A stretch of DNA of 63,062 nt, counting the filler, from Octopus bimaculoides (taxonomy: Eukaryota): the NCBI RefSeq assembly GCF_001194135.2. It is 6 parts of 6 records of this genome, joined end to end, with 100 filler letters (N's around TTAATTAATTAA, not from the genome) between each part and the next. Parts side by side here need not be neighbours in the genome. Positions count along the whole stretch, not along the records: positions 16,591 to 35,818 come from NC_069008.1; 5 more parts are not named here. One strand, written 5' to 3'. The translations under genes and the position numbers were made by a program. Position 1 is the stretch's first letter; each line of letters begins with the position of its first letter. Below the pieces are notes generated by a model. That model saw only the letters and a program-made list of their open reading frames with translations, made no database searches and had not been told where the DNA came from. Below are positions 16,547 to 35,289 of this stretch, piece after piece.

Positions 16547-16616
16547 NNNNNNNNNNNNNNNNNNNNNNNNNNNNNNNNNNNNNNNNNNNNATAAATATAT
16601 AGTTTTAGGGAAAAAG

Positions 16617-17072
16617 AACCAAGTTTCATGAACTCATCGATGAAAATCCACTATCACATATAGAAAAATTAATAATTAAAAGCACAATAAATGAGTATAA
16701 TATAATACAAAGTAAATATCATAAGATAAAGATAATAAAATGACTACACGTGTTTCATAACTAATTTTCAAATACAAAGGAAATTTAAATCGATTAGAAT
16801 CAATTAAAATTATCGAAAATAAATTCTATTCAAAAATACAGTTAATCGTCAGGTCTTAAATAGAACTGAAGTACGGAAAAATATGGATAAGTTCTATTTT
16901 TACTTTGCTAAATGATTTTCTACTATTTGAAAATAATATGTATTCTTGTTTTTTTATATTATTCATTTGGTTTTTTTTGAAACCAAGTTTCATGAACTCA
17001 TCGATGAAAATCCACTATCACATATAGAAAAATTAATAATTAAAAGCACAATAAATGAGTATAATATAATAC
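16617..17072 (+). repeat. Two identical 92-bp direct repeats (16617-16708, 16981-17072), end of a dispersed repeat family
   Basis: Exact duplication read by eye. A diverged inverted homologue lies at about 30885-30950, also next to (TA)n. Confidence 0.8.
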
Positions 17073-17074
17073 TT

Positions 17075-17107
<33 letters not shown>

Positions 17108-17217
17108 CTCAAACACACGCACACACATACATACACACACATACATACACACACACGTACACTTGTATCACACATTCGTACGTGCATATATGTATGTGTA
17201 TATGAAATATAATTGGT

Positions 17218-17286
<69 letters not shown>

Positions 17287-17317
17287 TGTGTGTGCGTACG
17301 CGTGCGAGCGCGACTGC

Positions 17318-17389
17318 GATCCGGAATACAATGGCTGTAAACAAATCACCTCATTGCTCAAAGAACTGAAGTTTGAACCGAGGAACTAA
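17318..17389 (+). pseudogene. Caspase C-terminal remnant (DPEYNGCKQITSLLKELKFEPRN*)
   Basis: Homologous to the last codons of the neighbouring caspases, with a 12-nt deletion. Truncated 5' by a (TG)n tract. Confidence 0.85.
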
Positions 17390-17483
17390 GATATTTAAGG
17401 TGCGGCATTCCTTAAATGAATATGGATCTTCTTACGGTTAGAATTTCTGATGCATGTGCATATTTTGAGTTGGAAGCCAGGAT

Positions 17484-17505
17484 TTGGATTTCGTTAACGC
17501 ATGCG
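17484..17505 (+). promoter_or_regulatory. Invariant 22-bp element upstream of caspase paralogue 1 (TTGGATTTCGTTAACGCATGCG)
   Basis: Identical at 20763-20784 and 23732-23753, about 90-100 bp before each ATG. It overlaps an NRF1-like CGCATGCG motif. The regulatory role is inferred. Confidence 0.5.
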
Positions 17506-17592
17506 TATTGATTGATAGCAATTTGAGAGGACAGAAATAATATATAATACACGGAACTACATTCAGCTCATCACATTATTACATTGACTACT

Positions 17593-18336
17593 ATGGCCGC
17601 TGGAAGTGCAAACGTTGGGACAGGCGTTCAGTCATCAACTGGCGATGATCTCAATAAATATTTCGCTGAATATGATATGAAAGATAAAACACGTGTTGCT
17701 TATATAGTCGACTCTGAGTGTTTATCAAACGATGCAATAGATTTTGGAAGGGCATTAAAACGTATTGGATTTAAATATGTCACTATTTCTAACATTTATG
17801 AAATGATGTGCAAAGATTGGAAAAAGTTTAACGAAGATAAACGTTATGGTAATATTGGTTGCTTTGTTTTTGTAATTATAAACTATGATCTTAAAAACGA
17901 TGGATTTGACGAAGTTGCACTAATTTCTAATCTGACAGCCGATAAGGGTCCATCTTTAGCAGGAGTACCTAAATTAATTTTTATTGAACCAAGTCGTGTA
18001 GATAGAGGACGCCACAAAACTGATGGACCTGAACCCGAACCTACGCAACGTAAAATCCCAATTACGGCAGATCTGTTGGTTTTTCGTTCGTGGTGGAATG
18101 AATTTCTGCCAATCAGCGGCGGACATGGAGATTCGCCGTTTATGAAAACATTAAGCAACGTTTTCATTAAGTATGGCACTGAATATGAAATCATGAAACT
18201 ATTAACAGCTGTCTCAAACTATATTGCCTCTTGTAAATTCCAAAGTTCGGATAATTCGGAAAACAATGGTTGTAAACAAATAACTCGGATCATGTCGACA
18301 TTGCTCAAAAAACTAAAGTTTGAACCGAGGAACTGA
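17593..18336 (+). CDS. Intronless caspase-3/7-like pseudo-protease (catalytically dead), 247 aa
   Basis: Caspase p20/p10 motifs (GVPKLIFI, KIPITADLLVF, IMSTLLKKLKF). QACRG is EPSRV, SHG is NYD, and both S1 arginines are absent. The frame is open and all indels versus the active paralogue are in-frame. Confidence 0.85.
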   Translation: MAAGSANVGTGVQSSTGDDLNKYFAEYDMKDKTRVAYIVDSECLSNDAIDFGRALKRIGFKYVTISNIYEMMCKDWKKFNEDKRYGNIGCFVFVIINYDLKNDGFDEVALISNLTADKGPSLAGVPKLIFIEPSRVDRGRHKTDGPEPEPTQRKIPITADLLVFRSWWNEFLPISGGHGDSPFMKTLSNVFIKYGTEYEIMKLLTAVSNYIASCKFQSSDNSENNGCKQITRIMSTLLKKLKFEPRN

Positions 18337-20469
18337 AATATTTCAAATGTGGATCCTTAAATAGAAATGCAGCTTCTTACGGTGAGAATTTCTGATGCAT
18401 CTACATATTATATGAAAAGAATATATTTTAGATATTCATACATCTAAAAATTCAAAGGGTGTATATTTTAAGAACTCATACATCTACAAATAAATACACT
18501 ATTTCACGTGTAATACCTACAACAGAAATTGATAAATAAATAAATGTAATATTTTTAACTAAATAATTACTAATACGATTGCAAACTTGATTTTAGTTTA
18601 ATTAATATCCTCTTACATTTTAAGATGCTTAACTAAAACTATTTCCTAAGAACGCCAGCGCTTTATTGGTACATTCTAAATTACAAACTAATTCTTCCCT
18701 CAGAAAATTGAACTAACATTCTTTTATATACAACTAAATATGAACAATATTAATATGTAGGCTATTTTATCCATGTGCTTTCATATATCGCTTGATTTGT
18801 AAAAGTTTATCTGCGAAAGAGAAATTATTTTTCTTGCTTTTCTTATTGCATTATACTATCTCAGCACCATTGCGTAATGTTTTTTTTTTCCAATGATTCT
18901 GCTATTTTTTTTACTCTGGTGGTTAATCTCACAATAAAATTTGTCTTTTATTAACATATAGTCTCTGAATTACCAACAACATAATAAAGTCTATCAGTTT
19001 TTACGTTGTTTCTTAATTTATTAAAATATATAAAGTGTGAATGAATGCTTAATTTATAAATGAATAAAGTTCTTTTCAAAAATTTCTTAAGTATTCCGAT
19101 GTTTTCATTATTGAAGTTTACGATTTTGCANNNNNNNNNNNNNNNNNNNNNNNNNNNNNNNNNNNNNNNNNNNNNNNNNNNNNNNNNNNNNNNNNNNNNN
19201 NNNNNNNNNNNNNNNNNNNNNNNNNNNNNNNNNNNNNNNNNNNNNNNNNNNNNNNNNNNNNNNNNNNNNNNNNNNNNNNNNNNNNNNNNNNNNNNNNNNN
19301 NNNNNNNNNNNNNNNNNNNNNNNNNNNNNNNNNNNNNNNNNNNNNNNNNNNNNNNNNNNNNNNNNNNNNNNNNNNNNNNNNNNNNNNNNNNNNNNNNNNN
19401 NNNNNNNNNNNNNNNNNNNNNNNNNNNNNNNNNNNNNNNNNNNNNNNNNNNNNNNNNNNNNNNNNNNNNNNNNNNNNNNNNNNNNNNNNNNNNNNNNNNN
19501 NNNNNNNNNNNNNNNNNNNNNNNNNNNNNNNNNNNNNNNNNNNNNNNNNNNNNNNNNNNNNNNNNNNNNNNNNNNNNNNNNNNNNNNNNNNNNNNNNNNN
19601 NNNNNNNNNNNNNNNNCATGGCTTGTGTGTGTGTAAGTGTGTGTGTGTTTGCGCGTCAAGTGCTTTACCATTAAGCTAAACTGCCCAGTAACGAATTCAT
19701 CTGTAATTTTAGAACTTATAAATTTAGTTTCATAAAGTTCGAGTCTCATGGCTGGCCGGTAGCGTATTTTTCTGCAATGTATGGATATTTTATCCTTCTC
19801 ACGCTATTTATTAGCATTATATTTTTTCAATTTTAAACTTTGAGAAGAAAACGCCCAATGTCACTCCTCAGACAATTTCCTGATTTCCAAAACTACAAAA
19901 CTCCGTATATTGTACGTATTGGGTGTGATCCTTTCAGCTAGCACAGATTTCCCCAGAAAAGTAGAAGGAAAAGATCAACCCCCTCACCAGAAAACTGGAT
20001 ATGCTAGAAATAAAAACTGAATGGGAAAATATTATTTCCTCGGCTTAACTACATCTTGTTTTTCGATTAACTCCAGCAAAGTACTCCAAGTTTAGTCTCT
20101 GGCCATATCCATCCCAGCACCATTCCACTGAAGAAAACTACACACACACGTACGCACACACAGATACACACACATTCGCACACACGCATACACACGCACA
20201 TTTTGGAAAAAGAAATTGTTTTGCGATAGAAACTGGAAGTGACATCAGAGACATCCTGTAATTCCATCTGAACTACATGTGATGTCATCGTCCCCGTAGT
20301 CATTATCATCGACGTGGTCGAAGAAAATATCGAGTTTGCAGTGTTATGTAGTGTTATCCGGGATGTTGATAGATACGACAACATTGAGAAGAGAGGATAC
20401 CTGCAAAATGTTCCGCACAGAAAAGCAGAGACAAATGAGGCATCCATAATGCAAAGTGTGGAAGTACAC

Positions 20470-20683
20470 GGAGGATTTATCTCTTGGCAGGGCAGTGACT
20501 TTTATGCAACGTTTAAGGAAATTTTTTAAGGAAATATGGCACTGAATATGATATCATGAAATTTTGAACCGCCGTCTCTATGTTGCCTCACTTGAATTCC
20601 GAAGTTCAGATAATCCGGAAAACAATGGCTGTAAACAAATAACCTCATTGCACAAAGAACTAAAGTTTCAACCGAGGAACTAA
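20470..20683 (+). pseudogene. Frameshifted caspase small-subunit remnant
   Basis: FMQRL..KYGTEYDIMKF..VASLEFRSSDNPENNGCKQITSLHKELKFQPRN* across frameshifts; carries the same 12-nt deletion as 17318-17389. Confidence 0.85.
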
Positions 20684-20762
20684 AATATTTCAGATGTAGC
20701 AACCTCAAATGAATATGGATCTTCTTACGGTGAGAATTTCTGACGCATGTGCATATTTTGAG

Positions 20763-20784
20763 TTGGATTTCGTTAACGCATGCG
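20763..20784 (+). promoter_or_regulatory. Invariant 22-bp upstream element, paralogue 2
   Basis: Identical to 17484-17505 and 23732-23753. Confidence 0.5.
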
Positions 20785-20947
20785 CATCAGTAGCAAACTT
20801 ACGTTAGTCAGATGGGAGGGCAGAAATAATATATCATACACGTAACTACATTCAGCTCATCACATTGTTATATTGATTACTATGGCCGCTGGAAGAGCAA
20901 ACGTTGAGACAAGCGATCAGTAGTATTCACCAATTGACGAAGCTCTC

Positions 20948-21646
20948 ATGGAATATTCCGTTGAATATGATATGAAGAATAAAACACATGTAGCTTATAA
21001 AGTCGACTCTGGGTGTTCATCATACGATGCAATAGATTTTGGAAGGGCATTAAAACGTATTGGATTTCATTATGTCCTTATTTATGACGATTTTAAAATA
21101 ATGTGCAAAGGTTTGGAAATTTTTAACGAAGATTGTAATATTGGTTGCTTTGTTTGTGCAATTACGAACCATAATCTTAAAAACGATGGATTTGACGAAG
21201 TTGCACTAATTTCTAATCTGACAGCCGATAAGTGTCGATTTTTAAAAGGAGTACCTAAATTAATTTTTATTGGACCAAGTCGTGTAGATAGAGGACACCA
21301 CGTAACTGATGGACCTGAACCCGAACCTACGCAACGTAAAATCCCAATTACGGCAGATCGGTTGGTTTTTCGTTCGTGGTGGAATGAATTTCTGCCAATC
21401 AGCGGCGGACATGGAGATTCGCCGTTTATGAAAACATTAAGCAACGTTTTCACTAAGTATGGCACTGAATATGAAATCATGAAACTATTAACAGCTGTCT
21501 CAAACTATATTGCCTCTTGTAAATTCCAAAGTTCGGATAATTCGGAAAACAATGGCTGTAAACAAATAACTCGGATCATGTCGACATTGCTCAAAAAACT
21601 GAAGTTTGTTCCGAGGAGGCAAAATATTTTAAATGTAGATCCTTAA
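20948..21646 (+). CDS. Second intronless caspase-like pseudo-protease, 232 aa (ancestral ATG at 20882 is cut off by an in-frame TAG at 20921-20923)
   Basis: Paralogue of 17593-18336. QACRG is GPSRV; His is retained (NHN) but Cys is Ser. It may be a young pseudogene or may initiate at 20948. Confidence 0.75.
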   Translation: MEYSVEYDMKNKTHVAYKVDSGCSSYDAIDFGRALKRIGFHYVLIYDDFKIMCKGLEIFNEDCNIGCFVCAITNHNLKNDGFDEVALISNLTADKCRFLKGVPKLIFIGPSRVDRGHHVTDGPEPEPTQRKIPITADRLVFRSWWNEFLPISGGHGDSPFMKTLSNVFTKYGTEYEIMKLLTAVSNYIASCKFQSSDNSENNGCKQITRIMSTLLKKLKFVPRRQNILNVDP

Positions 21647-23080
21647 ATAGAAATTAACATATAGTCTCTGAATTACCAACAACATAATAAAGTCTATCAG
21701 TTTTTACGTTGTTTCTTAATTTATTAAAATATATAAAGTGTGAATGAATGCTTAATTTATAAATGAATAAAGTGTGAATGAAGGCTTCATCTATGAATGA
21801 ATAAAGTGTTATTAAATGCTTCATCTATAATTTTGTTTGCCTGAAACGCAATATTTGGATGATGTTTACAATCCTATCATTTTCTTGTCATTTTCTTGCA
21901 GCTAATTGTTCGGCAATTTCCGTAAATAATTTCTTAATAATTTACCATCATTTCATATCCTGTTGAAGTCGATATTTGCTTTGAAGTCGTTGAGGTGGGC
22001 AAAATGAGACACTGAAGCTAGGAGCGAGTACACAAAAAGGCACCCGCATACTCACACGCACGCCTAGAATACAAATTTGCAANNNNNNNNNNNNNNNNNN
22101 NNNNNNNNNNNNNNNNNNNNNNNNNNNNNNNNNNNNNNNNNNNNNNNNNNNNNNNNNNNNNNNNNNNNNNNNNNNNNNNNNNTTTTTAGTTTTCAACATG
22201 AAACAAAACTAACATAAAGATGGAAAATAATGTTTATTTTTGTATATTTACATTAGAAAAGTTTTCTCCAATGTTTTTTGAATACAAAGTCCCAGAACAG
22301 ATCCTCACTATGGCACCGTGAATACTTTGAAATTATATTTCCGATTTCAAATAAACTACTTTGAATGTTATTGTAGCAAGGTTAAAGTGATTTCTTTTGT
22401 GATGTAAACCATTTACCATTTCTGCGGTGCCCCTACTTCCCTTGATACTCTAATCCTTATTTTGCTTAACGGTTAATCTAGCGCTGCCGATAATTTACAC
22501 TACAATCAGGAATTTACACTAGATTTAGGAATCTAATTATTTTATAATCAAATTTTTCTGCTAATAACAAAACTACATAAGAATCTTTCGTTCACACTTG
22601 AAATATTTTCATAGATTAAGACCTAACGTAAAAGCTAATATATTTTATTATTTCGTTGTCATTTCAGAGACTTTATGTTGTATATAAAACAATGTTAGTT
22701 CAATTTTCAGAGTGAAGAATTATTTTGAAATTTACAATATTCCTAGAAGGCACTGGTGTTCTAAGTAAAATTCATGGTAGGAAATAGTTTTAGTTAAACA
22801 TTAAAATGTTAGAGGTTATTTATTTAAGCAAATCAAGTTTGTAGTCACATGAAGAATTTTTTAGGTGCAGACATATTTATTTATCAATTTATGTTGTGGG
22901 TATTACATGTGAAAATATTTTATTTATTTGTAGGTGTATGAATTCCTAAAATATATACCTTTGCATTTGTGAATGTATGCGTGTCTAAAATATTTTTTTT
23001 TCGTATAATATACACATGCATCAGAAATTCTCACCGTAAAAATCTCCGTTTCTCTTTAAGGATCCCACACCGGAAATATT

Positions 23081-23351
23081 TTAGTTCTTTGGTTCAAACT
23101 TTAATCTTTTGAGCAATGTTGACATAATCTGAGGCATTTGTTTACAGCCACTGCATTCCGGATTATCCGGATTTTTGAATTCAAAAGAGGCAACACGTTT
23201 ACAGACAGCAGTTAACAATTTCATGATTTCATAGTCAGTGCCATATTTCACCAAAATTTTACTTAAAGTCTGCATAAAACACGAACCGTTACGTTTATGC
23301 ATGATTGACGGATGTTTATTATACGACGAATGGAAAACCAACATATCTGCC
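23081..23351 (-). CDS. 3' part of an inverted caspase-3/7-like paralogue (5' part presumably in the gap at 23352-23451)
   Basis: Open frame ADMLVFHSSYNKHPSIMHKRNGSCF...IMSTLLKRLKFEPKN*, running into Ns. Its 3' flank mirrors the 3' flank of the 23851 gene. Confidence 0.8.
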
Positions 23352-23540
23352 NNNNNNNNNNNNNNNNNNNNNNNNNNNNNNNNNNNNNNNNNNNNNNNNN
23401 NNNNNNNNNNNNNNNNNNNNNNNNNNNNNNNNNNNNNNNNNNNNNNNNNNNAGATTCTTATGTAGTTCTGCTATAAGCAGAAAATTTTGTTTGTAAAATA
23501 ATTAAATTCCTAAATCTAGTGTAATTTATCAGTTGCACTG

Positions 23541-23695
23541 GATTGCATTGTTGGCACTCCGTCGCTTACGACGTCGAGGGTTCCAGTTGATCCGATCAAC
23601 GGAACAGCCTGCTCGTGAAATTAACGTGCAAGTGGCTGAGCACTCCACAGACACGTGTACCCTTAACGTAGTTCTCGGGGATATTTCACCGAAAA
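23541..23695 (-). mobile_element. 3' fragment of tRNA-derived SINE, family C
   Basis: ttggcactccgtcgcttacgacgtcgagggttccagttgatcc... is nearly identical to 62175-62310. Confidence 0.85.
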
Positions 23696-23731
23696 TTATT
23701 TTCAGCTATGCTTTCACTTTGAAGCCAAGAG

Positions 23732-23753
23732 TTGGATTTCGTTAACGCATGCG
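23732..23753 (+). promoter_or_regulatory. Invariant 22-bp upstream element, active caspase
   Basis: Identical to the copies upstream of paralogues 1 and 2. Confidence 0.5.
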
Positions 23754-23850
23754 CATTAAATAATAATCTGATTTTAATCGGGTGAGATGACGGGAATGAT
23801 ATATCTAACAGGAACTAGATTCAGCTTGTCGCATTGCTGCATCGACTACT

Positions 23851-24620
23851 ATGGACGCTGTAAGTGTAAATGGTAGTACAGGCGCTCAGTTCCATTTACC
23901 AACTGAGGAAGATTTAATGAAATGTTTCGAAAAATATGACATGACACATGAAAAGCGAGGTGTTGCCTACATCTTCAACATGAAAAATTTCAGTGACCCA
24001 AAACTTCAAACTCGTCACGGCTCATCGAAAGACACAAAACATTTAAAAAGGGCTTTAGAAAATCTTGGTTTTCATGAAGATGATATCAACATATGTAAAG
24101 ATTTTACAGCCAAAGAAATGCTCGGGGCTTTGGAAGAATTTGACCTAAACAATCCTAAAATTAATATTGATTGCTTTGTTTGTGCAATTCTGAGTCATGG
24201 TGGTAAAAACGATATCATATGTGGATACGAAGGTAAAGTTGAGCTAGACGAATTGCTTTCTTGCCTGAGACCCGATCGCTGTCCATCTCTAACAGGAGTA
24301 CCTAAATTAATCTTTATTCAAGCATGTCGTGGAAGTAAGATTGATGTTGGAGTCGAAAAAAACGATGCTGCGGAAACAGAATCTGAAAGAAAGTCACCCA
24401 AAATTCCAATTATGGCAGATATGTTGGTTTTCCATTCGTCGTATAATAAACATCCGTCAATCAGGAATGAAGACAAAGGTTCGTGGTTTATGCAGACTTT
24501 AAGTACAGTGTTGATGGAACATGGCACTGACTATGAAATCATGAAATTGTTAACTGCTGTCTGTAAACGTGTTGCCTCTTTTGAATTCAAAAATCCGGAT
24601 AATCCGGAATGCAGTGGCTG
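23851..24620 (+). CDS. Intronless effector caspase (caspase-3/7-like) with an intact active site; the last ~21 codons fall in the gap
   Basis: RHG (S1 Arg, 24013), SHG (His, 24196), QACRG (Cys, 24325) and SIRNEDKGSWF (second S1 Arg, 24463) are all present. Short prodomain; Asp in the inter-subunit linker (EKND/A). Confidence 0.95.
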
Positions 24621-25182
24621 NNNNNNNNNNNNNNNNNNNNNNNNNNNNNNNNNNNNNNNNNNNNNNNNNNNNNNNNNNNNNNNNNNNNNNNNNNNNNNNN
24701 NNNNNNNNNNNNNNNNNNNNNNNNNNNNNNNNNNNNNNNNNNNNNNNNNNNNNNNNNNNNNNNNNNNNNNNNNNNNNNNNNNNNNNNNNNNNNNNNNNNN
24801 NNNNNNNNNNNNNNNNNNNNNNNNNNNNNNNNNNNNNNNNNNNNNNNNNNNNNNNNNNNNNNNNNNNNNNNNNNNNNNNNNNNNNNNNNNNNNNNNNNNN
24901 NNNNNNNNNNNNNNNNNNNNNNNNNNNNNNNNNNNNNNNNNNNNNNNNNNNNNNNNNNNNNNNNNNNNNNNNNNNNNNNNNNNNNNNNNNNNNNNNNNNN
25001 NNNNNNNNNNNNNNNNNNNNNNNNNNNNNNNNNNNNNNNNNNNNNNNNNNNNNNNNNNNNNNNNNNNNNNNNNNNNNNNNNNNNNNNNNNNNNNNNNNNN
25101 NNNNNNNNNNNNNNNNNNNNNNNNNNNNNNNNNNNNNNNNNNNNNNNNNNNNNNNNNNNNNNNNNNNNNNNNNNNNNNNNNN

Positions 25183-25462
25183 CAGACACGTGTACCCTTG
25201 ACTTAGTTCTCGGGGATATTCAGCGTGACACTGTGACAAGGCTGACCCTTTGAATTACAGGCACAACAGAAACAGGAAGTAAGAGTGAGAGAAAGTTGCG
25301 GTGAAAGAGTACAGCAGGGTTCGCCACCATCCCCTGCCGGTGCCTCGTGGAGCTTTAGGTGTTTTCGCTCAATAAACACTCACAACACCCAGTCGGGGAA
25401 TCGAAACCGCGATCCTATGACCGCAAGTCCGCTGCCCTAACCACTGGGCCATTGCGCCTCCA
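25183..25462 (-). mobile_element. tRNA-derived SINE, family C
   Basis: Matches 62275-62548; the head reads gtggaggcgcaatggcccagtggttagggcagcg on the minus strand. Confidence 0.85.
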
Positions 25463-26042
25463 CAGCACTGGATTAACCACTAAGCAAAATAGTCATGTGC
25501 TTAGGGTATCAAGGGAAGTGGAGACACTAGAAAAATGGTAAATGGTTTACATCACAAAAGAAATCACTTCAACCTTGTTACAGCAACATTCAAAGTGGTT
25601 TATATGATCGGAAATATATTTTCGAAGAGTTCATGTCGCCGTAGTGAGTATCCGATCGAGGACTATGCAATTAAAAAACGCAGGAGAAAACTTTTCCAAT
25701 GTAAATAAAGTGGTTGTACACAGAAATAAACATTATTTTTTCATATTACTGGTAGTTTTGTTTCATTTCAAATATAGACATTATTTTATAGTTTGTTATT
25801 GTTTATATTTCGAATTACATATATATGGGGATACCAAACAGCCTTCTCTCATCACATAGATGAAGAGGCTAATCTAAAACTGAGGCTGAATGACGTCCTC
25901 TCCTCATACCGACACTCTGGAATTCAATACCGAAGGATCGCTCTTATTTTCATACAAAATTGTTTTCGTATTGTTTTTATAAAAAAATAACAAATAATTC
26001 ATACTGAAAACTTCATAACCTTTTAGTTATATTTCATTCGTA

Positions 26043-26300
26043 AGGCAGCGAGCTGGCAGGATTGTTAGCACGCCGGACGAAATGCTTAGCGGCATTTCGT
26101 CTGTCGCTACGTTCTGACTTCAAATTCCGCCGAGGTCGACTTTGATTTTCATCCTTTCGGGGTCGATAAATTAAATACCAGTAAGACACTGAGGTCGATG
26201 TAATCGACTAGGCCCCCTCCCCACAAATTCGATGTCTTGTGTCTCCAGTAGAAAAGAATCGTTAGCACGCCGGGCAATATGCTTAGCGGCGTTTCTTCTG
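26043..26300 (+). mobile_element. SINE, family B, plus a partial internal duplication
   Basis: ggcagcgagctggcaggattgttagcacgccgg...; gaatcgttagcacgccggg is repeated at about 26256. Confidence 0.8.
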
Positions 26301-26305
26301 CCTTT

Positions 26306-26443
26306 AAAAAAATGGATGCTGATTGCAAGGCCTTTGACGAAAGGCCGCTCAAAATTCCAATTATTGCCGATATGTTGTTTATTTGATATTCGTCTTTCAG
26401 GATTAAAGAGGAAGGCTCGTAGTTCATCTAAACTATGTTAGCA
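26306..26443 (+). pseudogene. Decayed caspase linker/small-subunit remnant
   Basis: KKMDADCKAFDERPLKIPIIADMLFI*YSSFRIKEEGS*FI*TMLA aligns to EKNDAAE..SPKIPIMADMLVFHSS..EDKGSWFMQTLS, with three in-frame stops. Confidence 0.75.
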
Positions 26444-27985
26444 GCAGCAGTCTACATCACTGCGATCACCACCACCACCACCACCACCACCACCACAACC
26501 ACCACCACCACCACAACGTGGCTATGTGTCGCAGCAAAAGTTACTTACACCACCAGCTTGGCATCATTAGGAGGGTGACTGCTGTTACTATTAATATAAC
26601 GCCGTCACATCATCCAGCAGCAACAGTTGTAAGTTTGTTTACATCAACGCTTAGACAGTCGGCAACATTTACTGAGTCACTGTCGCTGGTAACATAAAAT
26701 TGAGGAATGGTTTAACGGAACCTGTATTAACTAGACATTTCCGAGACTACTTTGCTTCTGAGGATTTGCCTTTCCGCCTGAAGTATACAGGTTTTGTGAA
26801 ACTTGCCGCCATTGTCAGAAGCTTTCCTGGTGGATTAAATGTGTGTGTGTGTGGATATACATAGATAGATACATAACGTTGACCACAGCACATTGAATGT
26901 CCGCGTTAGTGGTCAACGTTATATATAAAAATATACTTTAATCCCTTGAGATTGCAGATATTATTTCTGAATCTCTTTGATTCTTTAAATGTGCTAGCTT
27001 CCTGGTAATTAATCGATATTAATTAATATATGATTTTTTACCCTATGTTTTAATAGATAGATAGATAGATAGATAGATACATANNNNNNNNNNNNNNNNN
27101 NNNNNNNNNNNNNNNNNNNNNNNNNNNNNNNNNNNNNNNNNNNNNNNNNNNNNNNNNNNNNNNNNNNNNNNNNNNNNNNNNNNNNNNNNNNNNNNNNNNN
27201 NNNNNNNNNNNNNNNNNNNNNNNNNNNNNNNNNNNNNNNNNNNGGGGCCGAGCGAATGAGGAAGAAATTAATGTAGGTTATGTACTTCGAATATTTTCTA
27301 CTTAAATCAGTCAGGCTAAATAAAGGGGTTTTTTTTTTTTCCATCTATTGTCTGCTTTGAGCTTTTGGTAACCGAAATTGGTTAGTTAAAGAATATGGGA
27401 GTCGACTCTCATATAGGAACTCGTACCGAAAGATCGCCGAAAAATCTATATCACCCCACTCCCGGAGCCTCGGGAAGCTTTAGGTGTTTTTGCTCAATAA
27501 ACACTCACCACTGGCCCATTGTGTCTCCACCATGGACAACCGTATGCTGTCAACAACAAAACTAACACGGTCGGGAGTAGCAGTGGTGCCGACGATGACA
27601 ATAACGACAACAACTACCACAATGGCAACACCGGGAACGAACACACAGCAGCAGCATCAAGGGCTGAGGGGTTGGGGCTGAGGAGAAAGAGACACGGCTG
27701 CTAAAAATTATGATACACACACACACACACACACACACAGCACACATACACTCACACATACACACACACACACTCAAGGGCACAAACGCATGCGCACATA
27801 AAGATACACATCTTAGAAGAACAGAATGGAGTGGAGCAAGAACACACACGGAAACGTAAAGTGTCGCTGAAGAGGTCACAGATGTGTGACGAAAGATTTC
27901 CGGACAATGGACAAGCGTCAAAATAATAAAAATAACAGTAATAAACGAGTGAAGAAAACTATATAGTGCGTGTGCTTATTTGGCA

Positions 27986-28076
<91 letters not shown>

Positions 28077-29479
28077 GAAATGGCCGTCCCGAAGTACAAG
28101 AATATTTTAAGATTTTTGAAATATATCGCTTACCTCTCTTTATTATTTACATACCACACTCTGATCGGTTCTCTCCCCTTAACGGGGAACATTACTCTCC
28201 CTTCTATTTCTTAGTAAATTCTCTTTCTTTCCCTTTCTTACAACGAAAGCAACAGTAGGTGGCAGCACCACCAGCCTCTTGTCAAATTTTCCACGAAAAA
28301 TGCCATATCTATACAAAGTATCGCTAAAACATTTACCAGCTTCTTCTTGGCCATAGAATACTTCATCCTTGATCAACCACAAATATTCTACAAAGCCCAC
28401 ATTCCAGTCGTGTTCCCTGCAGTGTAAACCGCAGTGAAATAGCCGTCACAAGTAGCAAAAGCTGAAGGACTACTGCAATAAGTGTATGACTCTGAGAGGG
28501 GAATTTGTTGAATAAAATCATAATTAATTGATCTTTCTGCATTTCCTTTTGCTCAAAGCCAGGAACTTTTCACCACCCCTCGTATGTATTCATGCATGAA
28601 TGCATGCATGTATGTATGTATGTATGTATGCATGCAAAACAAAAGATGAGTTGCCCCACCTTGGGGCCAATAAGACATAAGAAAGGCAAAGTAATTTATT
28701 CTTTCACTTGTTTCAGTCATTTGACTGCGGCCATGCTGACATTTTGTTTAAATTTTTTGTTGAATAAAATCTATTGAAAAAAAGCCACAATAATTTTGCA
28801 CAAACCTTATATATATATTTTCCAGCTTCTTAACCTCCGTATTTTTCCACATGTATTAAAAAAATCAAATTGAGTATGATTATTTTTTAGTATTTGAACT
28901 ATTTCTGTTATTTTCGCAATTTATCCAGTACAATGCTTAAATAAGTAAATAGTATTTTCCTAAACAATAGATCCACCTATTTCGGTTAGTGACACATTCA
29001 CGAATATACCAACACTAGCGCCACTGAGGGTCATATTCTCTGTGAATGCACAAAAGCTATTTTCAGAGTTATTTACTTTGAATTGTTATTATCTCATATC
29101 TGATTAGCCTGTTATTACGTAACATGCTTCACAATTTTAGTATACATACTTTATTAGTATTTCCCCCTATGTTCTATATACTGTGGGAATGTATTAAACC
29201 CCTTTTCGGGGCTACTTTATTTGAATTCTTACTATCAGGTAATTAATTTCATGTTATTACATAACTGACTTCACAATTTGGGTATTCATAACTTACTGGG
29301 AATTCCTAAAAACAAGATCCTGTGTAAGACAGTTCGGTATTCTCAATAAATGCACAAAAGCCGTTTTAAGGGCTACATACTTTGTATTGTTACTGATTAG
29401 TGAAACAATTATGAGAACAGAACCGCTTTCCCAGGATTACCAGGTACGTCAACTAGTATATATGTATATATATATATAT

Positions 29480-29890
29480 ATACACAAAAAGACCCATCAA
29501 GCCAAGTGAAAACGTAGTCATGAGTAATGACGGTGTCATGTAACTGGCACGCAAAAAGCACCTTTCAAGCGCTGGGCCTAACAGAGGTGATGATATATGA
29601 CAAAGATCTTTGTCAATATGCCATGCTTGAGTGGAAGACCCATCAAGCCAAGTCAGAATTGTAATGATGGCAGATAATGGTGTCATGAAACTGGCACCCA
29701 TGCTGGTGGCACAGAATTGCACCCATTACACTCTCAGAGTGTTTGGTGTTAGGAAGGGCATCCAGCCTTAGAAACAATGCCAAATCAAACTGGAGTCTAG
29801 TGCAACCCGTCAGCTTACCAGCCCTGGTCAAATTGGCCAACCCATGCCAGCATGGACAACAGATGCTAAATGATGATAATGATGGTGATA
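29480..29890 (+). mobile_element. Dispersed repeat, family D (SINE-like, GAT-repeat tail)
   Basis: cccattacactctcagagtgtttggtgttaggaagggcatccagc...catgccagcatggacaacagatgctaaatgatgat; related copies at 34165, 35290 and 62925. Confidence 0.75.
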
Positions 29891-30001
29891 CACACATACA
29901 CACACAGAGTAAATTTCAAAAATAAATAGAGTCAATCATTTTTTTGAAGGATTTATTTTGAGAAAGAAAATAATGCTATCTGATGCATTTAAATAATTCA
30001 T

Positions 30002-30460
30002 TTAGGATTTAGTTGACGTTTCTTCTGAAGGTCTTAATGTTTTAACCCATTTGGCTCTCTCTACCACCTTATTTGTCCTATCCTTTGGATATCTGTGGGT
30101 CAAAGAGGGTTTCCTTCTTGCTACTTTACCGTAGTAGCCAAGTTGATGAAGATACCTCACAGAAGTTCTCCGACTCTTTTGGAGTTGCTCTGCAACATCA
30201 GCTGCCTTACAATGGGGATTGTTTTCAACAATCTGTTCAACAGTCTGAAGACATTTATCAGAGGGCCCAGGTCGACCTGAGCGGGAGGCAGTTGATTCCT
30301 TTCCTTCGCTGGTGAACTGTACAATCACTCTGTTCACTGTGGCAAGAGGAATTCCAAGGCTTTGTGCAATCTTACGCTGGCTACGTCCACTATCAGACTG
30401 ACCCACGATACGTCCTCTTTGAAAATCTGACAATTCTTTCGCGTCTGGTGTTCGTGGCAT
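30002..30460 (-). CDS. Truncated Tc1-like transposase (DNA-binding domain only), copy 1, 152 aa
   Basis: [36 protein letters not shown] are Tc1 N-terminal motifs; no DDE domain. Confidence 0.8.
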
Positions 30461-30774
30461 GACCAGTTGCTATAAACAATTAATATACTGTAATCTGAAA
30501 TGAAAAATAATAGTACTTTTAAGAAGTGGGGGCGAGGCAATGTATTCATTTTTAAGAAGTCTGTTTATATATGAGGATGTGCTAAAGAGACAATACTGGA
30601 AGATCAGTTAATAATGATTTCATTCAACATATTCTCCTCTCAGATTCACACACACTCTGCAGTGGTCCTTCAGTTTTTCTAAGCACTGTAAAGGAACTTG
30701 GAAAATTAGGGCTCCAACCAGGCCTTTCACAATATCTTTAAAGCCAGGAACTTTTCAGTATCCCCTCCTATGTG

Positions 30775-30808
<34 letters not shown>

Positions 30809-30940
30809 CACATAGGAGGGGATACTATTAGGGACAAAATCCAAAATTACAGGTAAAAAACTCAATTAAAATCAATTTATAAAAAATTAATATAGTGGAT
30901 TTTCATCAATGTGTTCTTGAAAATTGGTTATTTTCCCTAA

Positions 30941-30982
<42 letters not shown>

Positions 30983-31155
30983 TATAATTGTAAACATAAT
31001 TATAATAAGGGGGTCAACTAATTGCTTCACCACATTCCGAATTTAGAAATAGCAGTTAAAAACTCCTTTTCTACTATGGTAAGAATCTCCCAGACGGCAA
31101 TACACTCTTTTACGAAGGCAAAAAGAGAAACAATGAATCCACATGACTCCGATTA

Positions 31156-31217
31156 GCCACATACGGGTTTCGAGATTAAAGTACATTTAATTACTTATTT
31201 CTCATCATCAGTGTAGC
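31156..31217 (-). ncRNA. Near-intact minimal type I hammerhead ribozyme (Penelope-type)
   Basis: gctaca-CTGATGA-t-GAGA...AAGTA(loop)TACTT...TCTC-GAAAC-cc-GTA-tgtggc: 6-bp stem I, bipartite stem II, 2-bp stem III and a GUA cleavage triplet. Confidence 0.65.
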
Positions 31218-33419
31218 ATTTCAAATATTAAATTTGAAAGTGCTGGGGTTAAATATGTGCACGATAGAGCGTCATCGAGCGAAAGATAGTTGAGCTCTGA
31301 TTGGCTGTATGCAAATGAGTTCATAACTGGGGTCCGGAACGCTCGTGGGGAAAAAACTACGCGTCCCGCTTGTCTTCCACGGGCCTATCCAGTATTTATG
31401 TTATTTAACAGCAAGGTAACTTATGTTGCTGTACTAGTCCCCCTTAATTTTATTTAGTTTTTTAATATCCCTAAACTGAAAAATTACCCCTTTGTGTATA
31501 TTCTAGATATCTTTTCAATTATGCTAATATTTAATAAAATACTTCCTTCTCCCAACATCGTTTCCTTTTAGAATACATATTTTTTAAACGACACTATACA
31601 AAAAGTATGCTTTCGAGAATGTAGATTACGTAATGTAGATGTTTGCGATAGAAAAATCAAGGGGGAAAAATATGAAAATTCCCAACAGATTGTCAATATT
31701 TGGGGGAGAGGAGACTAAAAGATTCATCCAAAATACAATTACTTTTTTAATATTGTCAACACAATCGTTATCTACAACCTCAAAAAATTATTTCTGCAAA
31801 GCGTTATTTACAAATACAACAAATTTGAGAAAATTTCGCGAAAACAAATTCGTGGGGCACTAAAGTGTAGAAATACCTTTAGTTGTCGCTGTTAAATTGA
31901 AAGATATCCTGCCAGTGGGATTCGGTTGAAAACTGTAAATAAGTCAGTCGTGTATATAACTAATGACGTTAATTGGGTGTTCCCATTTAATTAGTTGTTG
32001 AATAAAAAAAAAGGGGGAGAAATGAAAGCGTAAAACATGCGATCACTAAAATAGAAGTGTAATGGAGGAATAAGACAGAAAGTGGATTTATTGCATTTTC
32101 ATTGGTCAGTTCGGGTCACGTGATAGGACGTAACCATGCTGCTGGTGAAGGTTCGTGTGTTTACATAAACACTAACGTATGTGCTTGCGTACGTGTGTGT
32201 GAGTATATTTATGTTTCTGCGGTGAACGCCGTTTAAGTCACGATGTGAGTGAGGCAAAAGTTCGTTGAGTATAGGAACGAATTCAATATGCAGGAAGAAG
32301 TCAGTTCTTAGATATCCTCTTATTTATCATAGTCCTCTGTGCAGGCGCAATGGCCTAGTGGTTAGCGCAGCGGTCGTAGGATCGCGGTTTCGACTCATTT
32401 CGGAGATCATGCCAATATTTATGAGTAGAAGCCCATCAAATTTAATTTTTTCACATTAAATACCTATATAACCGTGATCTACACTCTGAAAGGTATTTAT
32501 AGGAAATTTCATTCAAAAAAATTACCAATTTTTCTAAAAATTATAAATAATAAAAGCCGTCTTGTGTGAATTTTCCGAAACTCCTCNNNNNNNNNNNNNN
32601 NNNNNNNNNNNNNNNNNNNNNNNNNNNNNNNNNNNNNNNNNNNNNNNNNNNNNNNNNNNNNNNNNNNNNNNNNNNNNNNNNNNNNNNNNNNNNNNNNNNN
32701 NNNNNNNNNNNNNNNNNNNNNNNNNNNNNNNNNNNNNNNNNNNNNNNNNNNNNNNNNNNNNNNNNNNNNNNNNNNNNNNNNNNNNNNNNNNNNNNNNNNN
32801 NNNNNNNNNNNNNNNNNNNNNNNNNNNNNNNNNNNNNNNNNNNNNNNNNNNNNNNNNNNNNNNNNNNNNNNNNNNNNNNNNNNNNNNNNNNNNNNNNNNN
32901 NNNNNNNNNNNNNNNNNNNNNNNNNNNNNNNNNNNNNNNNNNNNNNNNNNNNNNNNNNNNNNNNNNNNNNNNNNNNNNNNNNNNNNNNNNNNNNNNNNNN
33001 NNNNNNNNNNNNNNNNNNNNNNNNNNNNNNNNNNNNNNNNNNNNNNNNNNNNNNNNNNNNNNNNNNNNNNNNNNNNNNNNNNNNNNNNNNNNNNNNNNNN
33101 NNNNNNNNNNNNNNNNNNNNNNNNNNNNNNNNNNNNNNNNNNNNNNNNNNNNNNNNNNNNNNNNNNNNNNNNNNNNNNNNNNNNNNNNNNNNNNNNNNNN
33201 NNNNNNNNNNNNNNNNNNNNNNNNNNNNNNNNNNNNNNNNNNNNNNNNNNNNNNNNNNNNNNNNNNNNNNNNNNNNNNNNNNNNNNNNNNNNNNNNNNNN
33301 NNNNNNNNNNNNNNNNNNNNNNNNNNNNNNNNNNNNNNNNNNNNNNNNNNNNNNNNNNNNNNNNNNNNNNNAGAATTCTTCAAACTTTATGAATTAATAT
33401 GACCACTGTTAGTAAAACG

Positions 33420-33830
33420 AAGCTACTGGAATCTTTGGACTTGAGCAAGTTATGGTGAGGGCCATGTGTGGTGTGAAACTATTGGATAAAAGGAAGGCTG
33501 AGGACCCCTGATGGGGATACAGGGGTTGGAGGAATGGGTGGAACAGCTGGTAAGGGTGAATGGGGTGCAGTGGTATGGACATGCATGGAGGATGGATGAG
33601 GATCATGTTCTGAGGAAATTGCTTGAGTTTAAAGTGAATGAACCGCGAAAGCAAGGTAAACCAAAGAAAACATGGAGGGGACAGGTAGAGGAGGAGATTG
33701 GGAGGGTGGGCTTGAGGAGGAAGGACGCCCAAAACTGGGCGAGATGGTGTGAGAGTGGTTGCTGTAAGAGTGAGGTAGATCTGGCCACCCCCATTAATGG
33801 GGACAAACCCGGATTTAAAATATAGGAATT
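33420..33830 (+). mobile_element. RTE-clade LINE 3' end fragment
   Basis: MVRAMCGVKLLDKRK..WYGHAWRMDEDHVLRKLLEFKVNEPRKQGKPKKTW is a typical RTE C-terminal region. Confidence 0.8.
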
Positions 33831-34164
33831 CACCATTTTCCTTATCCCTTTTGATATCAACTTACCTGAGACAAGCCTTGGGTCTATGATACAAATTTAC
33901 CGTTTCAAATTATCTAAACCAAAACTTGCCATTGAAATTTCATATTAATTTAGGTTCCATGCATCAGCTTCATTGGTTTCAGACCAAATTGAAATTAAGG
34001 CAGAGAATTGTTACAGAAATATGGTAACAAATGTATTCATAAGACACAGTTTTCAGCAGTGAAGAAGCAATTAAGAAGAAGCTAATTTGAACTGACCAGA
34101 AAACAACATCCAACAAATTATATAGTCATAAGATCTTAATTAAAAATTCATGGGATTTTCCTTC

Positions 34165-34460
34165 ATCACCATCATCGTCATCAGCAACATCATTTAACGT
34201 CCATTGACCATGCTGGCATGGGTTAGACAGTGTAACCAGAGCTGGAAAGCTGGAGCGATGCACCAGACTCCAGTCTGGTTTCGTATGGTTTCTATGGTTG
34301 GATGCCCTTTCTAAGGACAACCACTTTACAGAGTGTGCTGCATGCTTTTATGTGGCACCATGTGGGCGCTTTTATGTGGCACCGCACAGGCATTTTTATG
34401 TGTTGCCACACGGGCTCTCGTGTTGCTGCATGGGCGCTTTTATGTGGCACTACCATAGGT
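34165..34460 (-). mobile_element. Dispersed repeat, family D, with a short ttttatgtggcac tandem array
   Basis: Reverse complement of 29700-29885. Confidence 0.75.
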
Positions 34461-34659
34461 GCTTTACACCACCAGAAGGATCAGTCTTAACATGTCTACT
34501 GTGTGGTACGTGTCTTCTTGATGATAACGTATGATAATGATGATGGTGATACACACATACACATACACAGTAAATTTCAAAACCAGAGTCAATCATTTTT
34601 TTGAAGGATTTAATTTCAAGAACGAAAATAATGTTATATGATGCGTTTAAATAATTCAT

Positions 34660-35118
34660 TTAGGATGTAGTTGAGATTTCTTCTGTAGGTTTTAATGTTT
34701 TAACCCATTTGGCTCTCTCTACCACCTTATTTGTCCAATCCTTTGGATATCTGTGGGTCAAAGAGGGTTTCCTTCTTGCTACTTTACCGTAGTAGCCAAG
34801 TTGATGAAGATACCTCACAGAAGTACTCCGACTCTTTTGGAGTTGCTCTGCAACATCAGCTGCCTTACAATGTGGATTATTTTCAACAATCTGTTCAACA
34901 GTCTGAAGACATTTATCAGAGGGCCCAGGTCGACCTGAGCGGGAGGCAGTTGATTCCTTTCCTTCGCTGGTGAACTGTACAATCACTCTGTTCACCGTGG
35001 CAAGAGGAATTCCAAGGCTTTGTGCAATCTTACGCTGGCTACGTCCACTATCAGACTGACCCACGATACGTCCTCTTTGAAAATCTGACAATTCTTTCGC
35101 GTCTGGAGTTCGTGGCAT
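34660..35118 (-). CDS. Truncated Tc1-like transposase (DNA-binding domain only), copy 2, 152 aa
   Basis: 11 nt differences from copy 1 over 459 nt (manual count); same truncation. Confidence 0.8.
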
Positions 35119-35289
35119 GACCAGTTGCTATAAACAATTAATATACTGTAATCTGAAATGAAAAATAATAGTACTTTAAGAAGTTTAAAGGACCAGATAA
35201 TGACTGCACATTAATGATGCAAAGCAGTATGGGAAGGTGGGGGCCGGCTATTCAATTTTGAGTAATTTATTTGTTTATATATATATATA

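What the first reader, a model, noticed from the sequence alone, without database searches (positions are those of the whole stretch)
17668..21310. 31 replacement vs 2 silent codon differences between the two dead caspases, confined to the large subunit
Seen (manual codon alignment from EYDM to the linker, about 115 codons; 17668-18020 vs 20963-21307): 31 codons change the amino acid, only 2 are silent (AAA/AAG, GTT/GTA), plus one 9-nt in-frame indel. The following ~100 small-subunit codons differ at only 5 codons (3 replacement, 2 silent). Neutral decay would give roughly 3:1, not about 15:1. Inference: diversifying selection on the p20 surface of enzymes that cannot cut anything, as expected of decoys in an arms race, with a constrained or homogenised p10.
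Basis: partly seen in the sequence, partly recalled or inferred. Interest (0 to 1): 0.85.

Follow-up and report, generated by a model that had tools for sequence, protein, structure and literature searches.

The report
Fast-evolving dead caspase pair in octopus
Two neighbouring octopus genes encode caspase look-alikes that can no longer cut protein yet change their amino acids faster than neutral DNA changes, which points to adaptive evolution of a regulatory or decoy protein; their near-identical rear halves come from recent copying between the two genes, not from constraint.

Summary
The count is correct: 31 replacement and 2 silent codon differences plus one 9-nt in-frame indel between 17668-18018 and 20963-21304. 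The 25 codons before it add 13:0.

The assembly gap (19131-19616) lies between the two genes and touches neither reading frame.

The window is Octopus bimaculoides. Gene A (17593-18336) has one colinear orthologue in O. sinensis.

Codon models give dN/dS of 4-7 for the front 140 codons:
- A versus B: p 0.012 to 9e-6.
- With the orthologue added: p 2e-5 to 1e-8.
- Each of the three branches is above 1 on its own.

A neutral pseudogene is also ruled out by reading-frame retention (p 0.003), by all four indels being in frame, and by five control frames that show no skew.

"Confined to the large subunit" does not hold. Between species the small subunit also changes at about 1.7 times the flanking non-coding rate. 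A and B are nearly identical there because a roughly 300-bp tract (18019-18318) was recently homogenised.

For A versus B, the skew is mainly a shortage of silent changes relative to the flanks. This is unexplained.

Copy B carries an early in-frame stop, a new start codon and a lost stop codon.

The decoy role is plausible but untested.

The parts
17319..17389 (+). Remnant of the 3' end of an older caspase copy (DPEYNGCKQITSLLKELKFEPRN*), directly after a (TG)n run. The same remnant and the same (TG)n boundary occur in O. sinensis.
17390..17592 (+). Spacer, presumably the promoter and 5' UTR of gene A. It differs from B's spacer by 13.8% and several indels, and serves as a neutral yardstick.
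17593..18336 (+). Gene A: intact single-exon ORF of 247 codons encoding a dead caspase-3/7-like protein. The catalytic His position is Tyr (17884-17886). The catalytic Cys position is Ser (AGT, 17992-17994; motif EPSRV in place of QACRG). The Arg87 loop is deleted.
17593..18018 (+). N-terminal peptide plus large-subunit (p20-like) part of A, which holds 44 replacement and 2 silent codon differences from B. Omega is 4-7.
18019..18318 (+). Linker plus small-subunit (p10-like) part of A. This is the tract homogenised with B 21305-21604 (4 differences in 300 nt). It is as diverged from O. sinensis as the rest of the gene.
18369..18949 (+). Downstream segment of about 580 bp, present in A and in O. 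sinensis but absent from B (a deletion in B).
18951..19070 (+). 120 bp identical to 21654-21773 downstream of B, a second stretch of complete A-B identity.
19131..19616 (.). Assembly gap between the A unit and the B unit. It lies in neither reading frame.
20520..20680 (+). Longer, frameshifted and stop-containing remnant of a caspase small subunit upstream of B. It extends about 90 bp further 5' than the remnant of A and of O. sinensis.
20882..21646 (+). Gene B. The conserved ATG is at 20882. An in-frame TAG lies at 20921-20923. A new ATG at 20948 opens the 232-codon ORF 20948-21646. The ancestral stop is changed to CAA (21620-21622), which adds 8 codons. The catalytic His position is kept as His (21170-21172). 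The Cys position is Ser (21278-21280; motif GPSRV).
23081..23350 (-). Inverted small-subunit fragment of a C-like caspase, cut by the gap 23352-23451. It belongs to the same rearranged cluster.
23851..24620 (+). Gene C: neighbouring caspase-7-like gene with SHG and QACRG intact, running into the gap at 24621. Used as a control: omega is 0.6 against its O. sinensis orthologue.

Best explanation
A and B are tandem, single-exon paralogues of an octopus-specific caspase-3/7-like family in Octopus bimaculoides. They sit next to an active family member (C). Their lineage lost the whole catalytic apparatus before the split from O. sinensis: the Arg87 loop is deleted, the His and Cys are replaced, and the second P1 arginine is gone. 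Even so, the gene has been kept as an open reading frame with the fold's core motifs, the strand that forms the caspase dimer interface, and the aspartate of the inter-subunit linker. It is therefore a pseudoenzyme, not a decaying pseudogene. Its amino-acid sequence turns over faster than neutral DNA, with own-gene dN/dS of 4-7 in the N-peptide and large subunit and about 1.7 times the flanking rate along the whole protein between species. This indicates recurrent positive selection (shown statistically). The near-identity of A and B over the linker and small subunit is a recent gene-conversion tract of about 300 bp within an older duplication (shown by site patterns and flanks). Inferred, not shown: the protein acts by binding. 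It may pair with or compete against active paralogues such as C, or act as bait for something that targets caspases, in the manner of known caspase-like decoys. The partner that changes is what drives the replacements. B may be a damaged or N-terminally shortened version.
For: Identity and orthology: homologues are O. bimaculoides and O. sinensis caspase-7-like proteins. O. sinensis locus L001 9551-11352 is colinear with window 17223-19047 at 82% identity. Dead status: alignment to caspase-7 and to family members; the Pfam caspase domain is present. Selection: NG86 gives omega 6.0 for the 5' part of A-B (Fisher p 4e-4) and 2.9-3.5 against O. sinensis. Maximum likelihood gives omega 4.3-6.5 for three taxa (p 2e-5 to 1e-8) and 4.6-10 for A-B. 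Branch omegas are 6.3, 7.2 and 3.1, each with p about 0.015. The neutral spectrum from the flanks expects 24% silent changes. Simulation gives p 0.028 and 0.0027. The five other frames show 4-17 silent differences and 7-22 stops. Not a pseudogene: P(no stop on the A-to-S path) = 0.0027; all four indels in the reading frame are multiples of 3. Between species the replacement rate is 0.228 (5' part) and 0.212 (3' part) against 0.127 for the flanks, p 2e-5 and 1.5e-3. The active neighbour C has omega 0.6 and dS 0.18. Conversion: 4 differences in 300 nt, flanked by 12-16% divergence. Copy-specific versus sinensis-specific sites are 3:53 in the tract against 48:53 (5' part) and 26:23 (upstream), p 1e-8. 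Retained features: linker Asp144 and 40 other columns are invariant in nine family members, and the C-terminal strand IMSTLLKxLKF is conserved.
Against: Relative to the flanks, the A-B replacement rate is not significantly raised (0.156 vs 0.126, p 0.31). The silent rate is oddly low (0.029 vs 0.126, p 0.004). The size of omega for the pair therefore depends on the yardstick, and the history of the 5' part is not settled. Against silent sites of the active neighbour alone, the between-species excess is only p 0.095. B has a premature TAG and a lost stop codon. Replacements do not avoid predicted core strands: 3 lie in the central strand (a poor model). There is no evidence of expression, and the exact proteins were seen on one contig only. 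Only three sequences were available, so no site models could be run. A and B are joined across a scaffold gap.
Confidence: 0.6

Rival explanations
1. The whole coding sequence of A and B was duplicated or homogenised recently (about 3% silent divergence everywhere). Since then a burst of diversifying selection hit only the N-peptide and large subunit, leaving the small subunit alone. No separate 3' conversion tract is needed.
For: Silent divergence is the same in both halves (dS 0.029 and 0.031-0.038) and is far below the flanks. Third-position differences (9/139 vs 4/105) cannot separate the halves.
Against: Difference density runs smoothly from the spacer (about 10% in the last 60 nt) into the reading frame, with no boundary at the ATG. 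Total divergence of the 5' part equals that of the upstream flank, and its copy-specific to sinensis-specific site ratio (48:53) equals the flank's (26:23, p 0.6). Both matches would have to be coincidences. Between species the small subunit is not spared.
Confidence: 0.2
2. Both copies are pseudogenes drifting neutrally. The 31:2 skew is chance or mutational bias, picked out after the fact.
For: All catalytic residues are lost. B has a premature stop and a lost stop codon. The A-B replacement rate is about equal to the flank rate. Replacements occur in core strands.
Against: Omega = 1 is rejected on three branches, including the independent O. sinensis sequence. The empirical neutral spectrum expects 24% silent changes. 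CpG transitions are only 6 of 54 differences, and weak-to-strong and strong-to-weak base changes are balanced. The other five frames show no skew. The reading frame is kept over 140 substitutions (p 0.003), and the indels within the reading frame are all multiples of 3.
Confidence: 0.08
3. The diverged 5' part of B (or of A) was pasted in by conversion or unequal crossing-over from an unseen third paralogue. The A-B differences then measure an older divergence and a mosaic, not changes since one duplication.
For: The cluster is visibly rearranged, with remnants of 3' ends before each gene, an inverted fragment and deletions. B's upstream remnant is longer than that of A and O. sinensis. Several gaps could hide sequence.
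Against: No third close relative was found in a 5.8-billion-protein search or an exhaustive search of representatives; the next hit drops from 410 to 160 bits. A mosaic origin would not by itself create a replacement excess, so the selection inference would simply move to the donor lineage. Changes are split evenly between the A and B branches when polarised with O. sinensis (23 vs 25).
Confidence: 0.1
4. A and B are two divergent haplotypes of one locus, placed in tandem by scaffolding across the gap. The pattern would then be allelic (balancing) diversity.
For: O. sinensis has a single dead copy in the 20-kb locus. A and B are joined only through a gap. Both have downstream sequence matching the same O. 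sinensis flank.
Against: The sequences upstream of the two units share no homology. B lacks 580 bp and has a different remnant. 13% divergence is extreme for alleles. The between-species signal does not depend on B at all.
Confidence: 0.05

Closest known systems
Caspase-like decoy molecules of Diptera (Aedes aegypti CASPS18, which regulates its paralogue CASPS19; Bryant et al. 2010, as cited in PMC3141678 and PMC7768685)
   Same: An enzymatically inactive caspase homologue that arose by duplication of an effector-type caspase. Critical catalytic residues are substituted, it lies near or is related to an active paralogue, and it is kept as a gene.
   Different: Regulation of a paralogue is shown for CASPS18 and is only inferred here. 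The octopus genes have also lost the Arg87 loop and the second P1 arginine. They show dN/dS well above 1 and a conversion tract between two dead copies. I have no record of comparable selection tests for the dipteran decoys (that paper is not held in the library).
cFLIP, the pseudo-caspase partner of caspase-8 (PMC7864959, PMC13545259)
   Same: A caspase-fold protein without the catalytic cysteine that works by pairing with an active caspase through the conserved dimer interface. The octopus proteins keep the equivalent C-terminal strand.
   Different: cFLIP has tandem death-effector domains and is recruited to a receptor complex. A and B have only a short N-peptide of about 27 residues and no recruitment domain. 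cFLIP is conserved across vertebrates, whereas these genes were found only in Octopus.
C. elegans CSP-2 and CSP-3, caspase homologues that block CED-3 auto-activation (from my own knowledge)
   Same: Non-proteolytic caspase relatives that act by binding the zymogen of an active paralogue.
   Different: CSP-3 lacks the large subunit altogether. A and B keep both subunits.
Gene-conversion tracts between tandem paralogues (concerted evolution; general knowledge)
   Same: A discrete stretch of near-identity, covering silent sites too, bounded on both sides by much more diverged sequence. The same stretch is highly diverged from the orthologue in another species.
   Different: Nothing unusual. The tract happens to start at the subunit linker, which made it look like a domain-specific constraint.

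Membership tests
Caspases (peptidase family C14A) | Caspase domain recognisable by sequence, with large and small subunit parts in order | tested here: met
   Pfam PF00656 scores 52.9, 49.0 and 58.2 bits (cut-off 21.4) for A, B and the O. sinensis orthologue. Best solved relatives are caspase-7 and caspase-3 (E 7e-13).
Caspases (peptidase family C14A) | Catalytic His-Cys dyad (SHG and QACxG motifs) | tested here: not met
   At the His position A has Tyr, B has His and O. sinensis has Gln. At the Cys position they have Ser, Ser and Val, in motifs EPSRV, GPSRV and EAVEI.
Caspases (peptidase family C14A) | Arginines that hold the P1 aspartate (Arg87 and Arg233 in caspase-7 numbering) | tested here: not met
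   An 11-residue deletion removes the TRxGS loop. No Arg aligns with Arg233, and GSWF is replaced by DSPF.
Pseudo-caspase / caspase-like decoy | Arose by duplication from an active caspase lineage, with critical residues substituted | tested here: met
   A and B lie in a tandem cluster with the active gene C (QACRG and SHG intact) and share 39-46% identity with active octopus caspase-7-like proteins.
Pseudo-caspase / caspase-like decoy | Maintained by selection rather than decaying | tested here: met
   The reading frame is retained (p 0.003), the indels within it are all in frame, and omega differs significantly from 1. For B alone the result is inconclusive: it has a premature TAG, but omega on the B branch is 7.2.
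Pseudo-caspase / caspase-like decoy | Binds or regulates an active caspase, or another partner | not testable with these tools
   Only indirect evidence: the dimer-interface strand and the linker Asp144 are conserved.
Pseudo-caspase / caspase-like decoy | Expressed | not testable with these tools
   The exact proteins were seen on one genomic contig only. No transcript data were available.
Unprocessed pseudogene | Neutral pattern of change (omega about 1, random stops and frameshifts) | tested here: not met
   Omega is 4-7 with p 2e-5 to 1e-8. There are no stops in A or in the O. sinensis copy, and no frameshifting indel inside the reading frame.
Gene-conversion tract | A discrete tract of near-identity, including silent sites, flanked by diverged DNA and not explained by constraint | tested here: met
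   18019-18318 has 4 differences in 300 nt, against 12% upstream and 16% just downstream. dN between species in the tract is 0.25. Site patterns give p 1e-8.

The most novel reading that the evidence does not exclude
The dead caspases are baits in a host-pathogen (or intragenomic) conflict. They keep the caspase fold, the dimer strand and a cleavable linker aspartate so that a caspase-directed inhibitor or protease of a pathogen, or an active host caspase, engages them. Their N-peptide and the outer beta2-alpha2 face are then reshaped again and again. This would be an innate-immune decoy system in a cephalopod, kept in two partly homogenised copies.
Probability: 0.15. Interest if true: 0.7.

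Novelty: new member of a known kind. Interest (0 to 1): 0.45.

Why it matters
Catalytically dead caspases that regulate live ones are known in vertebrates, flies, mosquitoes and nematodes. None has been described in cephalopods, whose cell-death and immune machinery is barely studied.

A pseudoenzyme that is kept open while its amino acids turn over faster than neutral DNA is a clear candidate for a protein whose job is recognition. It gives a defined pair of genes to test against the active caspase next door.

The case also carries a caution. A paralogue comparison suggested domain-specific constraint, but that was in fact a gene-conversion tract. Only the orthologue from a second species showed this.

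Tried and rejected
- **Alternative or overlapping reading frame:** rejected. The other five frames have 7-22 stops and ordinary silent fractions.
- **Mutational bias:** rejected as the cause. CpG transitions account for 6 of 54 differences, weak-to-strong and strong-to-weak changes are balanced, and third-position GC equals flank GC.
- **Excess of double-hit codons:** not seen. There are 9 such codons against about 8 expected (my own arithmetic).
- **Structural mapping:** the AlphaFold model from nine sequences was poor (pLDDT 54). I used only its secondary-structure elements and did not run a fold search. Surface versus core could not be decided.
- **More relatives:** the word-indexed search found 8 proteins. 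The exhaustive representative search found no second dead-caspase cluster close to A, B or the O. sinensis copy. Site models were therefore not possible.
- **Literature:** nothing on octopus dead caspases. The Bryant 2010 paper is not held.
- **First neutral simulation:** timed out and was rewritten.
- **Haplotype artefact:** the flanks argue against it, but reads are needed to settle it.
Full report
**What is there**

The piece (16591-35818) is AT-rich animal DNA with (CA)n runs, transposon fragments and six internal assembly gaps. It holds a rearranged cluster of single-exon caspase-like genes:
- Gene A: ATG 17593 to stop 18336.
- Gene B: conserved ATG 20882; listed ORF 20948-21646.
- An inverted small-subunit fragment at 23081-23350.
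- Gene C: 23851 onward, cut by a gap at 24621.
- A weak fragment near 26285-26437.

Each of A and B is preceded by the remnant of another caspase's 3' end (17319-17389 and 20520-20680) and a spacer of about 200 bp.

Protein searches identify the source as Octopus bimaculoides. The relatives are named caspase-7, caspase-7-like or caspase-3-like by their sources in O. bimaculoides, O. sinensis and O. vulgaris.

**The gap**

The gap 19131-19616 lies between the two units, 795 nt after A's stop and 1266 nt before B's ATG. The "ORFs" that cross it are runs of X. Both compared stretches are in uninterrupted sequence. What the gap leaves unknown is the true A-B distance, whether anything is hidden in it, and that A and B are joined only by scaffolding.

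**The observation**

Between 17668-18018 and 20963-21304 there are 31 replacement codons, 2 silent codons and one 9-nt in-frame indel.

The 25 codons in front add 13 replacement and 0 silent, so the 5' 139 aligned codons stand at 44:2. The 54 nucleotide differences fall 17, 28 and 9 on codon positions 1, 2 and 3. From 18019 to the stop there are 4 replacement and 2 silent differences.

**Are the genes dead?**

Yes, by alignment with caspase-7 and with active family members:
- The catalytic His position is Tyr in A and His in B.
- The Cys position is Ser in both (EPSRV and GPSRV in place of QACRG).
- An 11-residue deletion removes the loop carrying the first P1-binding arginine.
- The second P1-binding arginine and the GSWF motif are gone.

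The Pfam caspase domain is still recognised. Gene C next door has SHG and QACRG intact.

**The second species**

The O. sinensis protein XP_029653346 (P0003) is the nearest relative outside the window. Its locus is colinear with A's unit for 1.8 kb at 82% identity. The shared features are the (TG)n run, the remnant, the spacer, the gene and the 580 bp downstream that B lacks.

It is dead too: Gln at the His position, EAVEI at the active-site motif, and the same loop deletion. The loss of catalysis therefore predates the species split. Its reading frame is open from an ATG aligned with A's.

**Is the skew more than chance?**

- **Neutral expectation.** A mutation spectrum from 958 aligned non-coding sites around the gene predicts 24% silent changes.
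- **NG86.**
- **Codon-model likelihood.** With equal, F1x4 or F3x4 frequencies and free kappa, omega is 4.6-10 for A-B (p 0.012 to 9e-6). For the three sequences together it is 4.3-6.5 (p 2e-5 to 1e-8).
- **Per branch.** With a separate omega per branch, A, B and the sinensis branch give 6.3, 7.2 and 3.1, each with p about 0.015.
- **Other frames.** The five other frames serve as internal controls. They carry 4-17 silent differences and many stops.
- **CpG decay.** It explains only 6 of the 54 differences.

The condition "not significantly above 1 after correction" is not met, so the claim survives that test.

**Not a pseudogene**

A neutral walk of 140 substitutions, the A-to-sinensis distance, keeps the frame free of stops in only 0.27% of simulations. 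All four indels inside the frame are multiples of three (6, 9, 3 and 15 nt; p 0.012). A single-base insertion in O. sinensis at the very end of the reading frame (L001 about 10625) ends its protein four codons before A's stop.

Forty-one columns are invariant across nine family members. They include the core strands, the linker aspartate (Asp144 of A) and the YGTxYEI...LLT helix. The C-terminal strand that forms the caspase dimer interface is conserved.

As a control, the active neighbour C against its O. sinensis orthologue has dS 0.18, dN 0.11 and omega 0.6.

**The small subunit**

Between species the 3' part has dN 0.25 and omega 1.2-1.5. Its replacement rate (0.212) is higher than that of flanking non-coding DNA (0.127, p 0.0015), much like the 5' part (0.228, p 2e-5). 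It is not constrained.

The A-B identity is a discrete block: 4 differences in 18019-18318, with 12% divergence upstream of the gene, 12-14% in the 5' part, and 16% again in 18319-18368.

Polarised with O. sinensis, the counts of copy-specific versus sinensis-specific sites are:

| Region | Copy-specific : sinensis-specific |
|---|---|
| Tract 18019-18318 | 3:53 |
| 5' part of the reading frame | 48:53 |
| Upstream flank | 26:23 |

The tract differs from the others at p 1e-8. This is the signature of a recent conversion tract in an older duplication. A further 120 bp downstream (18951-19070 and 21654-21773) is identical.

**What remains unexplained**

For the A-B pair, the replacement rate in the 5' part (0.156) is not significantly above the flank rate (0.126). 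It is the silent rate (0.029) that is low (p 0.004). Silent divergence is the same in both halves of the gene.

There are two possibilities:
- The whole reading frame was homogenised recently and the 5' part then took about 50 replacements.
- Only the 3' tract was converted, and the silent sites of the 5' part are unexpectedly quiet.

The smooth run of differences across the ATG, and the equal site-pattern ratios in the flank and the 5' part, favour the second. Third-position counts cannot decide. In both cases omega exceeds 1.

B's longer upstream remnant suggests its unit is older than the species split, while distances group A with B. That fits concerted evolution (note 4).

**Copy B**

Fourteen codons after the conserved ATG there is a TAG (20921). 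Eight codons further on, AAT has become ATG (20948), which opens the 232-codon ORF. The old stop has become CAA, adding eight codons. B may be a shortened protein or newly disabled. Its branch still shows omega 7.2.

**Where the changes fall**

The structure model was poor (pLDDT 54), but its secondary-structure elements fit the caspase fold. Replacements concentrate in:
- the N-peptide (13 of 27 residues);
- the second strand, second helix and following loop (residues 61-86: 14 changes plus the indel);
- the central strand (3 changes);
- the vestigial active-site positions (98, 99, 132, 140, 142);
- residues 119-123.

The first helix (residues 47-60) and residues 100-118 are untouched.

**Comparison with what is known**

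Enzymatically inactive caspase paralogues that regulate active ones are an established kind:
- the dipteran caspase-like decoys (cited in PMC3141678 and PMC7768685);
- cFLIP (PMC7864959);
- nematode CSP-2 and CSP-3 (from my own knowledge).

A and B meet the sequence-level criteria: duplication from an active lineage, substituted critical residues, and maintenance by selection. Binding and expression cannot be tested here.

No paper in the library describes dead caspases in octopus. The exhaustive protein search shows no other close cluster. More distant dead members of the same octopus family do exist (P0017, P0012).

**Verdict**

Positive selection on a maintained pseudo-caspase is supported. 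Confinement to the large subunit is not supported and is replaced by a conversion tract. The decoy mechanism is a reasonable but untested inference. This is a new member of a known kind, of moderate interest.

Noticed in passing
Proteins P0005, P0007, P0008 (O. bimaculoides / O. sinensis caspase-7, caspase-3-like): Several otherwise complete octopus family members carry QASRG or EASRG, with serine in place of the catalytic cysteine. They keep SHG, the arginine loop and GSWF. They could be serine-nucleophile or inactive variants.
   Followed up: no
P0017 = XP_014774641.2 'caspase-6 [Octopus bimaculoides]' on a 110-Mb contig; P0012 on a 1.6-kb Logan contig: More distant members of the same family that have also lost the SHG and QACRG motifs. 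Loss of catalysis seems to have happened more than once in this octopus expansion.
   Followed up: partly
window 30002-30460 (-) and 34660-35118 (-): Two 152-codon ORFs, about 96% identical, with a helix-turn-helix-like N-terminus ([20 protein letters not shown]...). They look like copies of a Tc1/mariner-type transposase fragment.
   Followed up: no
window 22673-23350 (-): Inverted partial caspase unit: a small-subunit fragment, 84% identical in protein to gene C, plus about 400 bp resembling the downstream flank of A and of O. sinensis at about 79%. It is cut by the gap 23352-23451.
   Followed up: partly
L002 3001-3819 and 7455-8285 (O. sinensis CM016888.1, 13106628-13117915, reversed): O. 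sinensis has two C-like active copies (73% identical in protein) 11-20 kb from its dead copy and on the opposite strand. In O. bimaculoides, C is on the same strand as A and B, so the cluster has been rearranged between the species.
   Followed up: partly
window 17223-17318 and L001 9551-9643: A (TG)n microsatellite ends at exactly the same point against the caspase remnant in both species. B has about 90 bp more of the remnant there instead.
   Followed up: partly
window 17593-18336, 20882-21646, 23851-24620: The coding sequences of this caspase family are uninterrupted by introns. This is unusual for animal caspases and may point to a retrocopy origin followed by tandem expansion.
   Followed up: no
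window 16617-16708 and 16981-17072: A 92-bp direct repeat, 100% identical, upstream of gene A.
   Followed up: no
window 18010-18033 / 21296-21319; L001 about 10335-10355: The inter-subunit linker keeps an aspartate followed by a small residue in all copies (HKTD/G, HVTD/G, HAVD/A). The dead proteins may therefore still be cleavable by active caspases.
   Followed up: no
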